A stretch of 64,000 nucleotides of DNA from Schizochytrium sp. TIO01 (GCA_004764695.1 SMSO01000037.1:3324747-3388746), one strand, 5' to 3'; numbered from the stretch's first letter, positions 1 through 6,600 are shown. Numbers and translations: made by a program. The notes: generated by a model not told the origin, from the sequence alone.

Positions 1-2446
1 TTGCTAAAAAGGCATCAGCTTCGTCAATAAACAAAGCTACACCTCGCGGGGTCCGGTTCGCCCATTCAAAGAGCTGGTGAAGCTCAGTAACAGCGCGATC
101 CTTAAGAGGTGCGACGTCAGCACCACTCATGATTGCATAGTCCAGACCACACCACTTTGACAGACGGCGAGCCACCATGGTTTTACCTGTTCCAGGGGGT
201 CCATAGAACAAGAGGTGACGCAACGGGGTGTTGTTTACATGTGCAGCACGAGTCGCGCGTGCGATACGTTCAATTTGTGCAGCCTGAGACGAAGGCAAGA
301 CAACATCAGACATAAAGCTGACGAATGAGTCCTCTGCAGTAGCTTGCCCACCTGCTGGAACTTTTGAAGGCTTGTCAGCAGCATTATCAGTTTGAGCACG
401 GCGCTTCAACTCTGACTGGACCTGAACCAGTTTCTTGTTGACAATGAGTAAACCAGACTTTGCCAGCTCTAAGCCACGAGAAATCGGTGCCCAACCTCTC
501 TGAGAAGTCTCCCGAACCAGGGAAGGCTGACCCAGGCGATTCTCAAAGACCGTGCGCCAGTACACCATAAACTCACGCCCAGCATAAATACCAAATGCAA
601 GCATAACAAGCAAACTAAGTGCGCCAGCAACCTCGCGAGGACTCTGCGCAGCCAGACGAAATGCGGCAATGGACTCTTGAAATGCAGCTTGAATTGTAGC
701 GATGGCCTTCTCGCGCGCTTCTTTGGCGTCAATTTCAGCCATTTCCTTTCGCAAGTCATGGTTTTGCCGCTCTCGCTGAGCATCAGCCTCGCCTTGTGCA
801 AGCACGCGCACGCGCTCAAGGTCTCCTTGAGCATGGATTTTCGCAACGTCTGCCTCTGCTTGGGCTCGTACAAGAGCTTGGTCCTTCTCAGCACGTAGCT
901 CGAGCTCTCTTGTTACAGATTCCTCTTTGGCGCGAATCGTTTGCAGCTCGCGTTCAGCTCGCATAGATTCTTCCTCTCGAACTCGTGCAATTGAAGCATT
1001 ATCTTCGCGCTCCCGGCGCTCTGCCTCGATGGTAGCAGAACTTCGTGCACGTTTCTCTTCTTCGATAGTTTTCGTCCGTTCAAGCTCAATTTTGGCCTCT
1101 TCAATACGAGCTTGGGCTTCTAGACTTTTGCGCCGTTCAATAATTTCTTCTGCAGCTTGGGCATTGACCTTTTCCTCGAGTTCTGCAACCTGTTTAAGTA
1201 GCTGATCCACTTCAGTTTGAATTTTTACACTTTCCGCATGAGCGTTAGCACTCACCGAGCTAATATTCTGAGAGGACTCCTGAACTGCTTTCTCCAGGGC
1301 TTGTCGCAGACCCTTAAGGTCAGTTTCCAGAGACGAGGTGAGTTCGCCTTGGATCTTAAGAATACCTTCCACCTCTTTTTGCAAAGATGAAAGTTGCTGT
1401 TCCAAGTTGCCTACTTTATTCTCAATAGAGGTAATCGCAGAGCTTTGTTGGTTGTCCATAAGGTCTCGTCTTACGTGCACATCATTGACTGCCTTTTCGA
1501 GTTTCGTGGCAAGATCTTCGCGCATGCTTTCGAGAGATTTTGCCGTTTCAGCAGCAGACGAGCTTGCTTTCGCAATGGCCTCTTCCAATTTGCTTTGAGC
1601 ATTTTGACGGTCTGCAGCAACTTGGTCGACGCGTGATCCTAGTTGGGTCATGGCCTGGTTCAACCCTCCCATGCCCGTTGAGATTTCACGGTGCAAACCA
1701 GCTTGGTCTTTGACTTCCGTACGAAGATCATCTTGCAAAGTTTCAAGGCGACGCGAGAGAGCAGTCCGCTCCGCTTGCTCAATTCGACTTGTATCCTCAA
1801 GTGATTTGAGAACGTGCTCAAGACGAATAGCACCCTCACTGCGCTGATGAGCCTCTTTGGCCAATGTTTCGAGCTCAGATTGCTTTACCTGCAAGAGGTT
1901 GAGCGCTTCATGCGCCTGTTTACCGGTAGCTGCATCCTTTTCTAGATTCAAAAGAGTCTCTTTTAGGTTATCAAGTGACTTACGCACAGTTTTCGTACGT
2001 GCGATCAGCTCCTGTGTCGCTCCAATGTGTGCCATGAAAAGGTTCTCGCTATGGAAAACATGCACGTCGGTTAAAATTGTTGGATTCTCATCGTCCACAT
2101 GGCTAACTGATCTCTTGGGAATGACGCCAACAGAACCAGGCAGCACTGGTTTGATCTCCTGCGCAATGATTCCAAGTTGTCGTTTGCCAAAAATAGGGTT
2201 GTAAAACTGTTCATAGATGTAGTCAAATTCGCGCAGTTGAACTCTGCTCACAGCATCAAGCAGCGCCTCAGTGTCTGCAGGCGTGACATTGGTCTTGAGA
2301 CGCTCGTCTGAGACCAGAACGTCGTCCCACGACGACAAAATGGACTCTTTCACGCTTCTAGTGACTTCTTCTGCTCTTGTGCTGCTTTCGGAGAGCCAAA
2401 CGGTCGCAAGACTGATGAGGAGGATCACTTGGAGATGGGTCCGCAT
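1..2446 (-). CDS. ICA/peptidase S74 - coiled coil - TM - ATAD3-like AAA+ ATPase fusion protein (3' end beyond the window; at least 815 aa)
   Basis: Hand translation from ATG 2446: MRTHLQVILLISLATVWLSESSTRA-EE (signal-like), SDERLKTNV...GIIAQEIKPVLPGSV...ENLFMAHIGATQEL (ICA/S74, ~2311-2000), long heptad region, TM AGALSLLVMLAFGIYAG (~628-577), LGQPSLVRETS, HLLFYGPPGTGKT (Walker A 202-179), YAIMSGADVAPL, VTELHQLFEWA, ALFIDEADAFL (Walker B). The start codon and Walker B are in the same frame, and no stop-terminated ORF is listed in this frame. Confidence 0.9.
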   Translation of the reverse strand, partial: MRTHLQVILLISLATVWLSESSTRAEEVTRSVKESILSSWDDVLVSDERLKTNVTPADTEALLDAVSRVQLREFDYIYEQFYNPIFGKRQLGIIAQEIKPVLPGSVGVIPKRSVSHVDDENPTILTDVHVFHSENLFMAHIGATQELIARTKTVRKSLDNLKETLLNLEKDAATGKQAHEALNLLQVKQSELETLAKEAHQRSEGAIRLEHVLKSLEDTSRIEQAERTALSRRLETLQDDLRTEVKDQAGLHREISTGMGGLNQAMTQLGSRVDQVAADRQNAQSKLEEAIAKASSSAAETAKSLESMREDLATKLEKAVNDVHVRRDLMDNQQSSAITSIENKVGNLEQQLSSLQKEVEGILKIQGELTSSLETDLKGLRQALEKAVQESSQNISSVSANAHAESVKIQTEVDQLLKQVAELEEKVNAQAAEEIIERRKSLEAQARIEEAKIELERTKTIEEEKRARSSATIEAERREREDNASIARVREEESMRAERELQTIRAKEESVTRELELRAEKDQALVRAQAEADVAKIHAQGDLERVRVLAQGEADAQRERQNHDLRKEMAEIDAKEAREKAIATIQAAFQESIAAFRLAAQSPREVAGALSLLVMLAFGIYAGREFMVYWRTVFENRLGQPSLVRETSQRGWAPISRGLELAKSGLLIVNKKLVQVQSELKRRAQTDNAADKPSKVPAGGQATAEDSFVSFMSDVVLPSSQAAQIERIARATRAAHVNNTPLRHLLFYGPPGTGKTMVARRLSKWCGLDYAIMSGADVAPLKDRAVTELHQLFEWANRTPRGVALFIDEADAFLA

Positions 2447-3184
2447 GGTCGAGTTCCGGTTTAGTGCAGAGTTATGACTCTGTGATATTCTCGAGCAAGC
2501 AGATAAGTGGTCGTCGCTCGAGGTGAAAGACGGCCTCGCTGGCTGAGCGCAGTGCTCTACCCGCCAGCCCTGCGTCTTTCAAGGCCGCGATTAGCGTTTG
2601 CGTTAAACTGTCAAGCTTTTCGTTTTTTCTATCTGTCTGAGCAGATCCTTTTAACGGGAGCTTTTCATTTATCTCATCATACAGTGCCAATGATACTCTT
2701 AAGGCCAATTAGGAAATACTAAAACAAGTTAAAACGACAAGCAAAAGAGATAAACGGACGAGAATGAGCAACGTCTTGAAGCCAGAACGTGTTATTGAGT
2801 TGCTCATCTAGGTTTCCACGGTGAGCACGTGGAGGTAGCTTTGAGAGTTTGCGAGAGTGTCCAGATTGTTCTCAATGTCATACATGCTAATCAACTACTT
2901 TGGAGGCGAAAAAAAAAGCTAATCGAGTGTTCATGGATCAGCAATATTGAATTAATTGCGTTTCGAAGAAGAGAAAAAGCCCCAACAGAAACGCAGCGCG
3001 TACCCACGTACGATTTGGGAACCAGGATAAAATAAAAGTCCATAGAACTCGGTGGTTAGCTAATTTATACTATGTGCTCCAATGCTCCACACCCTCGTCG
3101 TGTCAACGCAAGCGTATCTATCGCTGCCACGAATCCTTTTGATAATGCCGATCATAACTGGTCTTTCAAGTCTTTCACACCTAA

Positions 3185-3667: not shown

Positions 3668-6600
3668 ATGGCGGAGCGGCTTCGACTCCGCCGTCGCGGT
3701 TCGCCGCCGCCGCCGCCGCCTCCTCCCCCCGCGCCGGGGTCTGGCATTTCCGGGAGTAATGACGATGTTGCGTCTCGTCTTGCTGACAAAGTGCGGCGCC
3801 AGGCAGAGACGCTCGTGGATTTGCAGAGCGACGTTGAGGATCGCACCCAGTATGCTCGACTTTGTGAACAGTTCGTTGTTACACTCGAGCCCTCGCAGCC
3901 TCTGCCTCTCGCCAAAGAAGATCTTGCAGCGCTACGTTCTCGGCGGCGACTAGTGGGACCGGAAAGCTACTCGTCCTCTTCAGCTGCCGTCAATCGAAAC
4001 AGCCGGCACACGCTCACGAGCATTGCGAAGCAGTATGATGCTGCGTGTAAACGAGTTCAAGATCTTACGCAGCGCACAGCGGAGCTCGAAGCAGAAATAT
4101 CCACAAGCCATCAGGCAAAAGAAGTCGCTGATCGACGTGTGGCGGCACTTCGAAGTAAGCTTGCGGATGCCCAAAACAAAGTTCTCCAACTCAGGAGAGG
4201 CGCAGGGTCCGTGGCAGTTGCGGCTGCAAATTCTGAAGAGATCGAAGGACTTCAGGCAAAGGTTACATCGTTGGAGCAGGATAAAATGAGGCTAAACGCG
4301 TCACTAGCAAAGGAGGCGAGAGCCACTGAGGAGCAAAGGGTATATATTGACGTCCTGCAGGCAGCACTGAAGGCTAGAGCAGAGGAACTGGGCATGGACC
4401 CAGAGCAGGTTCTCCACGCGGAGAAAGCAAAATTTGATGTGCTTGCAGCGAAAGGGACCATTGCGAGACTGGAACAGACGGAGCAGGAGCTCAGGGAGAC
4501 AATTTCAGTTGCGCATGAAAGACTTCGGTTGGAAAACTTGAGGCTCATGCAGACACGCAGGCGACTTGCGTTATATGAGCCTGATGAGGAGGATGACGAC
4601 GAAGAAAAGATTCATGCCGGTGAGTATGTACAGGAAGCAAAGGATCCAGCAACGCCTCGCAATGCAGGGTACCTTGTAGATGGAAAACGCGGGAGCCCTA
4701 TCCGGGATGGAAGAAATCTTCAGCACCTTCAAAACACAAATCGCAAGCTGAAGCAAGAGAATGAAGCTTTACTTGACTTTGTCAGAGAAACTGTGGAGCC
4801 CCTGAAAGCAGAAAAGCAAGAATTAGAGGATGCTTTGGAAACTACTGCGAGCTCACTTGGGGCTGCACGTAAAGAGAAAGAAGCCTTGCAGAACGAAATT
4901 TTCTTACTTGAACAGAAGCTGGAGACAGCTAAGCTTGAAAATGCCAAGATCAGCGTTGAGTGGAACGCCGCTCAAGAGGCTTGCATTACAACTGAAGAAC
5001 AGCGAGATCTTGCCAGGGCTCAGCTAGAAGAAACTAAAGAAGCTTTGGCGAAAATGAAGGTGCTTTTAGAATCACAAAAGGATGCCATGGAGAAATTGCG
5101 AGACGAGACAGCAGAGGCAAAGCAGCAGAGTCAAGCTGCAGGCGACCTTGCTCAACAGCTTGCAGACACGCAAAATGCGCTCCGTTGCGAGCGTAGAGAA
5201 CTGGTGGCCACAGAAGAGAAAAGATCAAGTCTTGAGAACAAAGTCAAGGAACTGGAGGTAGCACGTATGGATCTACAGGACCGTGCAGATAAGTTACAGG
5301 GTGAGCGTACTAGGCTAGAGACACAAGTAACTTCTCTGGAGGTATCTGTGGCACAGGCCAAAAAGGAAGCTCAAGACTTTAAAACTACTTGTGAAGAACA
5401 GACATCTGAGCGGCGCACGATAGATGATGAGTTGAAGGAGCTACGAATGTTCAAACGCAAAGCATGGCGAATTGAAAAGGCGATAGCGACTCTTTGGCAC
5501 GAAGGTGCTTCTCCCGATATTAGCTTGGCAAATCTTCAGGATATCTTGCAACGGGTCTCCTCGAGTGCCATGGGAGGCTCAGACGAGGAGGCATCTTCCA
5601 CAGTTATGAGTGCATTGGAGAATATCATGCCACATCTTAATTCTTTGCTCTTCTCTGCTCAATCTCTCGTTTCTCGAGCTCACTCGGACGCAGTTCGCGT
5701 GCAAAAAGACCTTGCAGGCCAGGAGGACCGGTTTCAGGTTGAGAAGCGTTTATTACACGACGAAATTCATGCTCTGAGGCAAAAATTTCAAAAGGTTGAA
5801 GAAATGCAAGAAAGGTCTCGTCAGATCTCCATGGATGAAAAAATGTATGTTAGCCAGAATTCAGTAGCAACAGCTGCTGATCTTGCGGAGTTAGATCGTC
5901 TTAGACAACGTTATGCCGACCTTGAAACAAAATATGCCTCTCTAGAACTGCAATTACATGATGCAGAGCATAGTGGCACCGATCTAGGTAACCAAGCGCC
6001 CCAGAGCGTATCATCATCCACGAGAGACTTTGCTCAAGGGACATTACGAAATATGCGTTCACGGATTGAACAGGCGTCTGAGCATGCGGAGCAGCTCGAA
6101 TCACTCCAACTGGAGCTTGAGAAAGCTGCTGCTCTGGTAAGAGAGCAAGAAGAAATCACTCAGCAGGTTGAAGCTCAACTAATTGACACTGAAGAACAGT
6201 GGCATGCGCTTCAACAAGATGTTGATTTGGTGCGCAAGCTGGTTGTATCAACGGTGAAAGGCGTGTATCTTCGCTACAGATCTTCACACGGCGGCGTTCG
6301 AGAGTTCTTTGTGGAGGGCCCGCCTCCAGGTCGGGATCAGCCTGAACGTTCTCTCGAGGACAGTATTCTGCCACTCTGCGAGCTTGTGGAATCAGTTCTC
6401 GAGTTTGATATTGGTCAACAGCGCAATGTTCTGCCCCGTGGTCGTTCTTCTGGGCGGCCCGGTGTCGCGCCAGCGTGAGAGGGAGCGCGCAGCTCGTATT
6501 GAAGCATTAAATGAGTCCCTTAGTCGTGCGCAGCGCGTAGTAGAAGATACGAGAGCGCAGCTCGACTCAGAGCTACATCAGGACTCTCAGCAAAACGAAT

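What the first reader, a model, noticed from the sequence alone, without database searches (positions are those of the whole stretch)
1..2446. MYRF/phage-type self-cleaving ICA domain fused to an ATAD3-like AAA+ ATPase (ORF absent from the ORF track)
Seen: one uninterrupted minus-strand frame from ATG 2446 off the left edge. It encodes S46-D-E-R-L-K51...GIIAQEIKPVLP...ENLFMAHIGATQEL, ~450 aa of coiled coil, one TM helix, and the ATAD3 signatures LGQPSLVRETS / LFYGPPGTGKT / SGADVAPL / LFIDEADAFL. Known: SDxRxK (Ser-Lys dyad), G[VI]IAQE and a FMxxxGAxxEL helix mark the intramolecular chaperone auto-processing (peptidase S74) domain of phage endosialidases/tail fibres and of MYRF/MrfA, which trimerises and cleaves itself just before the Ser. 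Characterised ATAD3 proteins are mitochondrial membrane AAA+ ATPases without such a domain. Inference: this is a self-processing membrane AAA+ machine where a trimerising ICA module nucleates a long coiled-coil stalk coupled to a (usually hexameric) ATPase ring. I am not aware of this architecture having been characterised.
Basis: partly seen in the sequence, partly recalled or inferred. Interest (0 to 1): 0.88.

Follow-up and report, generated by a model that had tools for sequence, protein, structure and literature searches.

The report
Signal-peptide ATAD3 paralogue capped by ICA
A marine protist (thraustochytrid-like) has, besides its normal mitochondrial-type ATAD3, a second membrane AAA+ ATPase with a secretory-type signal, a phage/MYRF-type self-cleaving trimerising cap and a very long helical stalk; this uncharacterised architecture is conserved in other stramenopiles and in dinoflagellates.

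Summary
The minus-strand frame from ATG 2446 is open to the window edge and continues 164 codons beyond it, giving a 979-aa single-exon gene. Peptidase_S74/ICA (46-106), ATAD3_N (422-645) and AAA (745-871) all exceed Pfam's gathering scores.

The ICA module folds at pLDDT 92.8. Its best solved match is the MyRF ICA (7dc3). A homotrimer model scores 0.88 against 0.00 for the best control.

The fusion is neither a chimera nor a singleton. Colinear transcript-sized contigs from three studies cover it, and strain variants give pN/pS of about 0.35. Dozens of 50%-identity clusters share the layout, with named members in Hondaea, a diatom, Chrysoparadoxa and dinoflagellates.

- The genome also has a conventional ATAD3, so this gene is a divergent paralogue.
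- Every complete member starts with a signal-peptide-like segment and has only 10-25 residues before the cleavage Ser, so there is essentially no cargo.
- The stalk has two parts: a heptad coiled coil (about 166-428) and an E/R/K-rich helix (429-601).

The Ser-Lys dyad is intact here but lost in some lineages. No paper found describes the architecture. Location, cleavage and function remain inferred. The scan's only earlier notes on this are on the same stretch.

The parts
2447..2618 (-). 5' untranslated region (approximate)
   Evidence: Transcript-sized contigs from runs X1, X4, X6 and X19 end at L002 8549-8618, which is window 2549-2618. There is an in-frame stop 44 codons upstream, and no ATG is visible in the 180 nt upstream. 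The 1-nt indels between strains at window 2453 and 2457 lie here, outside the CDS.
2384..2446 (-). Residues 1-21 (MRTHLQVILLISLATVWLSES): predicted cleavable signal peptide, with a basic n-region, an uncharged hydrophobic core (residues 7-19) and small residues at -3/-1
   Evidence: Maximum KD over 10 residues is 2.91 at residue 7, and no 19-residue window reaches TM strength. A comparable N-terminal hydrophobic segment is present in all 25 complete family members examined and in none of 11 conventional ATAD3s. No dedicated signal-peptide predictor was available.
2312..2383 (-). Residues 22-45: short pre-cleavage segment, the only 'cargo' ahead of the ICA. Its end (SW-DVLV) is shared with Hondaea, and in the trimer model it contacts the neighbouring subunit
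   Evidence: Alignment and census. Low pLDDT for residues 24-43. Interface residues 39-57 in the trimer model.
2294..2311 (-). S46-D-E-R-L-K51: predicted Ser-Lys catalytic dyad. The predicted scissile bond is V45|S46
   Evidence: Sequence. Aligns with the dyad region of the MyRF structure 7dc3, whose S587/K592 are essential for cleavage (PMC8326128). In the family Ser is kept in 31 of 37 informative members and Lys in 36 of 41.
1952..2311 (-). Residues 46-165: ICA (Peptidase_S74) domain, made of a beta 'donut' and the start of the C-terminal trimerising helix (from residue 133)
   Evidence: Pfam PF13884, 42 bits. PDB sequence hit 7dc3, E 6e-6 over residues 46-163. AF2 pLDDT 92.8. Foldseek: 7dc3 E 1.6e-8, then 3gw6, 3gud and 4uw8. 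Homotrimer score 0.88 against 0.00 for the best control. All four strain variants in residues 1-165 are synonymous.
1163..1951 (-). Residues 166-428: heptad-periodic coiled-coil stalk, with helix breaks near 205-212 and 337-343
   Evidence: Power at period 3.5 is 3.7-12 times background in most windows from 177 to 428. Model helices 133-204, 213-336 and 344-481. Trimer contacts follow an a/d rhythm to the end of the modelled piece, about residue 192.
644..1162 (-). Residues 429-601: E/R/K/A-rich helix without heptad periodicity (single-alpha-helix-like). This is the part homologous to ATAD3_N
   Evidence: A 20%, E 20%, R 14%. Period-3.5 power is 0.08-0.94 times background for windows 429-568. 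Pfam ATAD3_N covers 422-645. Helices 344-481 and 485-601.
578..631 (-). Residues 606-623 (VAGALSLLVMLAFGIYAG): the single transmembrane helix
   Evidence: The only 19-residue KD windows above 1.4. The following 20 residues carry three Arg against two Arg and two Glu in the preceding 20, which fits the AAA side being cytoplasmic or matrix-like.
503..538 (-). Residues 637-648 (RLGQPSLVRETS): juxtamembrane ATAD3 signature
   Evidence: G639, P641, L643 and R645 are invariant in the family alignment. The same motif follows the TM helix in the conventional paralogue, as MGKPPLIRETSRR.
1..214 (-). Residues 745-815 of the AAA+ domain (Walker A GPPGTGKT at window 179-202; Walker B LFIDEAD at 14-34). 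The domain, lid and C-terminus (to residue 979) continue left of the window to G000:C36:3324253 (L002:5507-6000)
   Evidence: Pfam AAA, 84 bits over 745-871. K755, D808, E809, N851 and R863 are invariant. pLDDT is about 90 for 710-960. The nearest solved relatives are hexameric Afg2 and p97/Cdc48.

Best explanation
This is a real, expressed, single-exon gene for a 979-aa membrane AAA+ ATPase. It belongs to an old, uncharacterised sister lineage of conventional ATAD3 found in stramenopiles and dinoflagellates.

Shown: the order of modules is an N-terminal signal-peptide-like segment, about 24 residues, a MYRF-type ICA domain with an intact Ser46-Lys51 dyad, roughly 470 residues of uninterrupted helix (a heptad coiled coil followed by an E/R/K-rich helix), one TM helix, and an ATAD3-type AAA+ module with all catalytic residues.

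Inferred mechanism: the signal peptide sends the N-terminus across the ER membrane, giving a type I protein. The ICA cap and stalk would then lie in the lumen or outside the cell, and the ATPase in the cytosol. Three ICA domains assemble through the helix that starts at residue 133, which sets the register of a parallel three-stranded stalk. Once trimeric, the Ser-Lys dyad cuts the V45|S46 bond and sheds the short N-terminal peptide. As in MYRF and unlike in phage fibres, the ICA stays on the membrane-anchored product. The ICA therefore acts as an N-terminal assembly clamp for what lies downstream of it, not as a chaperone for an upstream fibre. The non-heptad E/R/K helix could let the three strands separate before the membrane, so that two trimers could feed one classical hexameric AAA+ ring.

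The cellular role is unknown. My best guess is a force- or distance-setting membrane device, not the nucleoid and cholesterol role of mitochondrial ATAD3.
For: The gene is real. The frame is open and complete. Colinear contigs of 3.2-3.6 kb from three studies span the whole ORF without joints and end 100-170 nt before the ATG, and indels occur only outside the CDS. pN/pS is about 0.35, with only synonymous changes in residues 1-165. The domains all pass Pfam's cut-offs.

The ICA is genuine. Its best solved sequence match is 7dc3 (E 6e-6). The AF2 model has pLDDT 92.8. Foldseek finds 7dc3 at E 1.6e-8 and TM 0.74, then phage chaperones 3gw6, 3gud and 4uw8. The homotrimer model scores 0.88, best of 3 controls 0.00. 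That mark was reached by 21 of 30 proteins solved as pairs of one chain and by 0 of 23 solved as single chains. The runs agree in at least 87% of contacts and the partner pLDDT is at least 79. In MyRF, cleavage needs the dyad and trimerisation by the C-terminal helix but not the upstream fold (PMC8326128), so an ICA with almost nothing upstream could still cleave.

It is a family, not a singleton. Eleven hits have the same three domains, 22 of 25 N-terminal-ICA representatives carry ATAD3_N, and adds more. Named members are Hondaea fermentalgiana, Chaetoceros tenuissimus, Chrysoparadoxa australica, Durusdinium trenchii and Gymnodinium smaydae, plus MMETSP and TSA transcripts.

It is a paralogue. 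A conventional ATAD3 lies on C31 (244 bits to ATAD3_N; 83% identical to Hondaea's and about 50% to animal ATAD3). Conventional ATAD3s form one clade and the signal-peptide/ICA proteins lie outside it.

The N-terminal signal is family-wide. The hydrophobic N-terminus is present in all 25 complete members examined and in none of 11 conventional ATAD3s. In one subclade an AxG-type site sits directly before a conserved NWLLQCxxCVDQ peptide. The two-part stalk is shown. The ATPase residues are invariant.
Against: No experiment or dedicated predictor supports the ER/secretory location; it rests on N-terminal features alone. Every characterised ATAD3 is mitochondrial, including that of the alveolate Plasmodium falciparum (PMC13249166).

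Cleavage is untested. Several lineages keep the domain but have lost the Ser (Gly, Ala or Glu) or the Lys (Tyr), so proteolysis cannot be the domain's universally selected function.

The trimer prediction may come from the model's memory of the solved MyRF and endosialidase trimers, and the calibration used two copies, not three. The stalk's oligomeric state beyond about residue 192, the 3:6 arrangement and the single-helix behaviour of 429-601 are inference only. The full-length monomer model has pLDDT of only 60-70 there.

The runs used as transcript evidence are labelled 'RNA?' as a guess. The root of the ATAD3 tree is not established.
Confidence: 0.55

Rival explanations
1. The protein is mitochondrial like other ATAD3s. 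Its N-terminal hydrophobic segment would be an outer-membrane or intermembrane-space anchor or sorting signal, not an ER signal. The ICA cap and stalk would then sit in the intermembrane space or reach the cytosol, with the AAA+ ring in the matrix, making it a self-processing variant of the ATAD3 inner/outer-membrane tether.
For: It shares ATAD3_N, the TM helix, the RLGxPSLVRETS motif and the AAA module with mitochondrial ATAD3. Characterised ATAD3s are mitochondrial, with an N-terminal coiled coil reaching outwards, in human and in Plasmodium (PMC13249166). The charge bias after the TM helix fits a matrix-facing orientation as well as a cytosolic one.
Against: The genome already has a highly conserved conventional ATAD3. 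The N-terminus has no amphipathic basic presequence. It has a short hydrophobic core with small residues at -3/-1, which is typical of signal peptidase substrates. In the dinoflagellate-type subclade the conserved mature peptide begins directly after an AxG site. Conventional ATAD3s lack any such segment. No named apicomplexan ATAD3 clustered with this lineage.
Confidence: 0.2
2. The ICA domain serves here only as a non-catalytic trimerisation cap, and no self-cleavage takes place. The conserved dyad in this lineage would be a relic or would play a structural part.
For: The domain is retained in lineages where the nucleophile is Gly, Ala or Glu or the Lys is Tyr. There is no upstream cargo to release. 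In MyRF trimerisation comes from the C-terminal helix, not from cleavage (PMC8326128).
Against: In this protein, in Hondaea and in most members the S-D-x-x-x-K dyad and the surrounding pocket residues (G92, A95, Q96, E97, P103, Q145) are kept. All four strain variants in residues 1-165 are synonymous. The residues just before the Ser are conserved within clades (SW-DVLV; NWLLQCxxCVDQxxF), as expected for a substrate strand. In MyRF cleavage is independent of the upstream fold.
Confidence: 0.2
3. The fusion is an assembly or gene-model artefact that joins an ICA gene to an ATAD3-like gene.
For: The ORF runs off the window and was not in the ORF list. One database relative (P0094) is clearly a merged gene model.
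Against: There is one uninterrupted 979-codon frame. Independent contigs from three studies are colinear with it. The same architecture occurs in many independent genomes and transcriptomes down to about 30% identity.
Confidence: 0.01

Closest known systems
MYRF / Dictyostelium MrfA ICA domain (PDB 7dc3; Pfam PF13884 and PF13887)
   Same: It is the best sequence and fold match. Shared features are the Ser-Lys dyad in S-D-x-R-x-K, the G-[VI]-I-A-Q-E motif, the beta 'donut' and a C-terminal helix that forms the trimeric coiled coil. In both, the ICA stays on the membrane-anchored C-terminal product and a TM helix lies downstream.
   Different: MYRF is a type II ER protein. Its ICA faces the cytosol and releases a large N-terminal DNA-binding trimer through a beta-helical stalk. 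Here there is no NDT80-type domain or beta-helix, only about 24 residues precede the Ser, the ICA probably faces the lumen, and a 470-residue helix plus an AAA+ ATPase follow.
C-terminal intramolecular chaperone domains of phage endosialidase, tailspikes and tail fibres (3gw6, 3gud, 4uw8; MEROPS S74)
   Same: Same domain family and fold, with trimerisation-dependent self-cleavage at the Ser (PMC8326128).
   Different: In phages the domain is at the extreme C-terminus, chaperones the upstream triple beta-helix and is discarded after cleavage. Here it is at the N-terminus, is retained, and what it can nucleate lies downstream. The other three S74-bearing open frames in this genome keep the domain well inside the frame. 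In the two ORFs examined it lies near the C-terminus, at 316-378 of 425 and 491-547 of 594.
Conventional ATAD3 (human ATAD3A, PfATAD3; Pfam PF12037 + PF00004)
   Same: A charged helical ATAD3_N region, one TM helix followed by RLGxPxLxRETS, and a classical-clade AAA+ module with Walker A, Walker B and an Arg finger.
   Different: About 35% identity to plant ATAD3 over the shared half. ATAD3_N scores 56 bits against 244 for the conventional paralogue in the same genome. It falls outside the conventional clade. It has an added signal peptide, ICA and about 260 residues of extra heptad coiled coil. No localisation or function data exist.
Trimeric lumenal coiled-coil spacers (SUN-domain proteins, Climp63). 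This is an analogy from my own knowledge and was not tested
   Same: A membrane protein with a long lumenal coiled coil ending in a globular oligomerising head.
   Different: No sequence or fold relationship was sought or found, and those proteins lack an ATPase. The analogy only illustrates what a stalk of up to about 70 nm could do.

Membership tests
[quoted passage not shown] | Profile match to PF13884 above the curated cut-off | tested here: met
   42 bits against a cut-off of 22, residues 46-106, profile positions 1-57 of 58.
[quoted passage not shown] | Ser-Lys catalytic dyad in S-D-x-x-x-K at the start of the domain | tested here: met
   S46 and K51 are present and align with the dyad region of the MyRF structure 7dc3, whose S587/K592 are essential for cleavage (PMC8326128). 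Ser is kept in 31 of 37 and Lys in 36 of 41 informative family members.
[quoted passage not shown] | ICA fold: a beta-sheet 'donut' plus a C-terminal helix | tested here: met
   AF2 pLDDT 92.8. Foldseek: 7dc3 at E 1.6e-8 and TM 0.74 on the target, 3gw6 at 1e-5, 3gud at 2e-4, 4uw8 at 3e-3.
[quoted passage not shown] | Homotrimerisation | tested here: met
   In silico only. Score 0.88 against 0.00 for the best of 3 controls. The mark was reached by 21 of 30 proteins solved as pairs of one chain and 0 of 23 solved as single chains. At least 87% of contacts are shared between runs and pLDDT is at least 79. The result may reflect memory of solved ICA trimers.
[quoted passage not shown] | Autoproteolysis immediately before the Ser | not testable with these tools
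   This needs expression of wild type against S46A and K51A, with mass spectrometry.
[quoted passage not shown] | Position C-terminal to a trimeric fibre or beta-helix that it helps to fold | tested here: not met
   After the predicted signal peptide only residues 22-45 precede the Ser. This holds across the family, with 10-25 residues in each member.
ATAD3 (conventional, mitochondrial) | ATAD3_N (PF12037) followed by an AAA domain (PF00004) | tested here: met
   56 bits (cut-off 25) and 84 bits (cut-off 21).
ATAD3 (conventional, mitochondrial) | TM helix followed by the (R/M)-(L/M)-G-x-P-x-L-(V/I)-R-E-T-S motif; intact Walker A, Walker B and Arg finger | tested here: met
   TM 606-623 and RLGQPSLVRETS 637-648. 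K755, D808, E809, N851 and R863 are invariant.
ATAD3 (conventional, mitochondrial) | Membership of the conventional ATAD3 clade (orthology) | tested here: not met
   Conventional ATAD3s of animals, a chytrid, oomycetes, ochrophytes and this genome's own C31 gene form one clade (SH-aLRT 100). This protein lies outside it with the other signal-peptide/ICA proteins. The root is not established.
ATAD3 (conventional, mitochondrial) | N-terminus without a secretory signal; mitochondrial location | tested here: not met
   A hydrophobic signal-like N-terminus is present here and absent from 11 conventional ATAD3s. The location itself cannot be tested with these tools.
MYRF-type membrane-bound transcription factor | NDT80/PhoG-type DNA-binding domain and beta-helical stalk upstream of the ICA | tested here: not met
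   No such Pfam hit at E up to 1, and only 45 residues lie upstream of the Ser.

The most novel reading that the evidence does not exclude
The signal-peptide/ICA/ATAD3-like proteins are a non-mitochondrial class of membrane machine shared by stramenopiles and dinoflagellates. A self-cleaving trimeric ICA cap would nucleate a lumenal or extracellular stalk tens of nanometres long, which is mechanically coupled across the membrane to a cytosolic hexameric AAA+ motor. The ICA domain would be used in reverse, acting on what lies downstream of it. In the dinoflagellate-type clade the cleavage would also release a conserved 15-residue CxxC peptide.
Probability: 0.3. Interest if true: 0.85.

Novelty: new variant of a known kind. 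Interest (0 to 1): 0.66.

Why it matters
ATAD3 is studied as a strictly mitochondrial AAA+ protein that is important in human disease and was recently shown to be essential in Plasmodium. A deep sister lineage with a secretory-type signal would show that the ATAD3 chassis has a second, unexplored cellular use in major marine protist groups: thraustochytrids, diatoms and dinoflagellates, including coral symbionts.

For the ICA field it is the first arrangement I could find in which the domain sits at the N-terminus with essentially no cargo. That separates its trimer-nucleating role from its fibre-chaperoning role. It also offers a natural series of active-dyad and dead-dyad versions for comparison.

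The combination of a trimeric cap with a typically hexameric motor raises a concrete, testable question about symmetry mismatch. Everything beyond the architecture and its conservation is still inference.

Tried and rejected
- **Assembly or gene-model chimera:** rejected.
- **Only ATAD3 of the organism:** rejected, because a conventional paralogue exists on C31.
- **One-genome oddity:** rejected.
- **Uniform 450-aa coiled coil:** rejected in favour of a two-part stalk.
- **MYRF-like transcription factor:** rejected, since there is no DNA-binding domain.
- **Apparent multiple origins or losses of the ICA in the first tree:** largely an artefact of detection. P0028-P0030 have a signal peptide and a degenerate ICA, P0011 is truncated, and only P0023 truly lacks the domain.
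- **ESM Atlas search with residues 1-420:** returned only generic S74 clusters at sub-threshold scores of 0.83-0.84, so it added nothing.
- **Literature searches pairing ATAD3 with ICA, S74, endosialidase, MYRF, stramenopiles, dinoflagellates or diatoms:** found no description of the architecture.
- **Linking to the experimentally mitochondrial PfATAD3:** the paper mentions no ICA or signal, and no named apicomplexan protein appeared among relatives of the degenerate-ICA clade. Its placement stays open.
- **RNA evidence:** no run is on record as RNA, so the transcript-like nature of the contigs is inferred from their sizes and ends.
- **Scan notes:** a word search for ICA, S74 and ATAD3 returned nothing.
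- **Neighbouring ORF:** the 936-aa ORF at window 3668-6478(+) has no Pfam match, so it gave no context.
- **Not done:** no AU test of a single clade and no careful tree were run.
Full report
**Observation.** The minus strand of window 1-2446 translates into 815 codons without a stop, starting at ATG 2446. The ORF is missing from the ORF list only because that tool does not list ORFs that run off an end of the source. The window is G000:C36:3324747-3388746 in a 64-Mb, 37-contig genome. I fetched 6 kb to the left (L002). The frame closes after 979 codons, at L002:5507-8446(-), with no sign of an intron. ATG 2446 is the first ATG after an in-frame stop 44 codons upstream, and no ATG is visible in the 180 nt upstream.

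**Domains.** Pfam gives three hits above the curated cut-offs: Peptidase_S74 (residues 46-106, 42 bits against 22), ATAD3_N (422-645, 56 bits against 25) and AAA (745-871, 84 bits against 21). There is also a weak AAA-lid hit. The only strongly hydrophobic 19-residue windows are at 604-628, giving a single TM helix at 606-623. It is followed by more positive charge than precedes it. Walker A, Walker B, sensor-1 Asn and the Arg finger are invariant across the family. The closest solved relatives of the ATPase half are hexameric classical-clade AAA+ proteins (Afg2, p97/Cdc48), and no ATAD3 structure appears among the solved chains.

**The ICA module is genuine.** A sequence search of the PDB with residues 1-200 finds the MyRF ICA domain (7dc3) as best hit (E 6e-6). 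It aligns from Ser46 through the C-terminal helix to residue 163. Residues 24-200, predicted with a 64-sequence alignment, fold at mean pLDDT 92.8. The model has four strands, short helices and one long helix from residue 133. Foldseek against the PDB returns 7dc3 first (E 1.6e-8, TM 0.74 on the target). Next come the endosialidase chaperone 3gw6, 3gud and the T5 tail-fibre chaperone 4uw8. Nothing else scores below E 0.1.

A three-copy model scored 0.88 against 0.00 for the best of three controls. That mark was reached by 21 of 30 proteins solved as pairs of one chain and by 0 of 23 solved as single chains. The runs share at least 87% of contacts, and the partner pLDDT is at least 79. The tool warns that this may reflect memory of solved ICA trimers and that calibration used two copies. 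The interface follows an a/d rhythm along the helix to the end of the piece, and the strand carrying Ser46 (residues 39-57) contacts a neighbouring subunit. This matches the 'cable through the donut' arrangement described for MyRF. The MyRF structure paper shows three relevant things. S587 and K592 are indispensable. Trimerisation is driven by the C-terminal triple coiled coil. Unlike in phages, cleavage does not depend on the upstream fold (PMC8326128). An ICA with almost nothing upstream could therefore still cleave.

**The gene is real and expressed as one unit.** Twenty-three public runs from 11 studies hold 73-91% of the sampled words of the locus. I laid four runs on L002:5300-8700 (3,401 letters, within the operators' limit). 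Three studies each gave a single contig of 3,620, 3,606 or 3,217 nt that is colinear with the whole ORF. A fourth run covered it with two overlapping contigs. There were no joints. The 5' ends lie 100-170 nt upstream of the ATG. The only indels lie in the flanks, outside the CDS. These sizes and ends look like transcripts, but the runs' 'RNA?' label is a guess, so this is suggestive and not proof. Strain differences within the CDS are 16 synonymous and 18 non-synonymous, giving pN/pS of about 0.35, and all four changes in residues 1-165 are synonymous. Relatives derived from transcriptomes (MMETSP, Trinity and TSA entries) carry the ICA and the AAA on one ORF.

**It is a conserved family.** The word-indexed search found 11 proteins with precomputed PF13884 + PF12037 + PF00004, including Hondaea fermentalgiana (62% identity, 1,006 aa) and a protein filed under Durusdinium trenchii. 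An exhaustive search of 1.84 billion representatives with the ICA module alone gave 316 hits. Many carry the ICA at residues of about 25-175 in proteins of 540-900 aa. Of 25 such candidates, 22 have ATAD3_N and 18 have AAA. Cluster look-ups add Gymnodinium smaydae, Chaetoceros tenuissimus (GFH60663.1) and Chrysoparadoxa australica. A third search adds a MAST assembly with a recorded S74 domain, plus a Noctiluca scintillans relative for which no S74 was recorded. No paper in the searched library mentions ATAD3 together with ICA, S74, endosialidase or MYRF.

**It is a paralogue of conventional ATAD3.** The same genome encodes a 595-aa conventional ATAD3 on C31. It scores 244 bits on ATAD3_N and has no signal peptide and no ICA. 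It is 83% identical to Hondaea's conventional ATAD3 and about 50% to animal ATAD3, so Hondaea also has both forms. In a tree of the shared region, conventional ATAD3s form one clade (SH-aLRT 100), and the ICA-bearing proteins form several deep lineages outside it. Rows that first seemed to lack the ICA turned out to be truncated (P0011) or to carry a signal peptide and a degenerate ICA (P0028-P0030). Only P0023 keeps the signal and stalk without an ICA. This fits a single origin of the fusion. However, the tree was a quick search, the outgroup branch is very long, and no AU test was run.

**N-terminus.** All 25 complete members examined begin with a hydrophobic, signal-peptide-like segment, with maximum KD over 10 residues mostly 2.5-3.7. 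Eleven conventional ATAD3s reach no more than 1.75, in Ala-rich stretches. Only 10-25 residues separate this segment from the S-D-x-x-x-K motif. In this protein the core spans residues 7-19 and is followed by S-E-S, and the remaining residues 22-45 end in SW-DVLV, which Hondaea shares. In the dinoflagellate-type subclade a conserved peptide, NWL(L/H)QCxxC(V/S/I)DQxx(F/Y), starts directly after an AxG-type site and ends at the cleavage Ser. That looks like a signal-peptidase-generated N-terminus. No dedicated predictor was available, so the secretory reading is inference. The other S74-bearing open frames in this genome hold the domain well inside the frame, and the two ORFs I examined have it near the C-terminus, which underlines how unusual the N-terminal position is.

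**Catalytic residues across the family.** Ser46 is Ser in 31 of 37 informative sequences (Gly 2, Ala 2, Cys 1, Glu 1). Lys51 is Lys in 36 of 41 (Tyr 4, Ser 1). G92, P103 and Q145 are nearly invariant. The diatom and Chrysoparadoxa subclade and the P0026-P0030 subclade have lost the dyad but keep the domain. So the universally conserved property is the fold, presumably for trimerisation. Cleavage is probably retained in this protein's clade but is dispensable elsewhere.

**Stalk.** There is no proline between residues 130 and 603. The full-length model gives helices 133-204, 213-336, 344-481 and 485-601, then the TM-containing helix 603-638. The AAA+ module is confident (pLDDT about 90) and the stalk is low-confidence (60-70), as expected for a monomer. 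Heptad periodicity is strong in most windows from 177 to 428. It is absent for windows 429-568. Residues 429-601 are 20% Ala, 20% Glu and 14% Arg, resembling a single alpha-helix more than a coiled coil. Fully extended, about 470 helical residues would span roughly 70 nm. That figure is my arithmetic at 0.15 nm per residue, and whether the breaks act as hinges is unknown.

**Mechanism.** The best-supported reading is a type I membrane protein. The signal peptide would place the ICA cap and stalk in the lumen or outside the cell. The ICA trimerises through its C-terminal helix, sets the register of the downstream coiled coil and then sheds the short N-terminal peptide at V45|S46. The E/R/K helix, TM helix and AAA+ module connect this stalk to an ATPase ring on the cytosolic side. 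The main rival keeps the mitochondrial ATAD3 topology. It is supported only by homology and by the fact that every characterised ATAD3 is mitochondrial, PfATAD3 included (PMC13249166). I could not place PfATAD3 relative to this lineage. A second rival holds that the ICA is purely structural here. An artefact is excluded.

**Verdict.** This is a new variant built from two known modules, conserved and uncharacterised. Location, cleavage, stoichiometry and role are still to be tested.

Noticed in passing
G000:C31:6141730-6142482 (+); L003:1354-3138: This is the conventional ATAD3 paralogue: 595 aa, starting MWPFSK..., with no signal peptide and no ICA. It scores 244 bits to ATAD3_N, is 83% identical to Hondaea's conventional ATAD3 and about 50% to animal ATAD3.
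   Followed up: partly
G000:C24:1489361-1491337 (-); L006 and L009: Two Peptidase_S74 domains lie about 1.8 kb apart inside a 10,882-codon open frame, so this is a giant gene. The longest contig in run X1 is 35.6 kb and might be its transcript.
   Followed up: no
G000:C34:4630228-4630416 (+), L005:556-1830; and G000:C6:1310009-1310179 (-), L007:1360-3141: Two further S74 genes have the ICA near the C-terminus of the ORF examined (316-378 of 425 aa; 491-547 of at least 594 aa) and no other Pfam domain.
   Followed up: partly
Family members P0010, P0012, P0013, P0014, P0082, P0090, P0091, P0093, P0097, P0104, P0106, P0180, P0231: In the dinoflagellate-type subclade a conserved 15-residue peptide, NWL(L/H)QCxxC(V/S/I)DQxx(F/Y), with a CxxC pair, lies exactly between an AxG-type signal-peptidase site and the ICA cleavage Ser. 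It could be a released peptide or a disulfide-stabilised cap.
   Followed up: partly
P0023 (1,312 aa) and P0009 (1,311 aa): Stalk length varies greatly within the family. P0009 has a much longer coiled coil. P0023 has the signal peptide and a long coiled coil but no detectable ICA.
   Followed up: no
P0094 (615 aa): This database protein combines LSM, CN_hydrolase, S74 and ATAD3_N. It is probably a merged gene model and not a real architecture.
   Followed up: no
window 3668-6478 (+): The neighbouring 936-aa ORF, divergently oriented about 1.2 kb upstream of the ICA-ATAD3 start, has no Pfam match at E 0.001 or better.
   Followed up: partly
window 541 and 915 (L002 6541 and 6915): All four laid runs differ from the reference at N636H and V511A, so the assembled strain carries the minority allele at these two codons. 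Either that or these are assembly errors.
   Followed up: no
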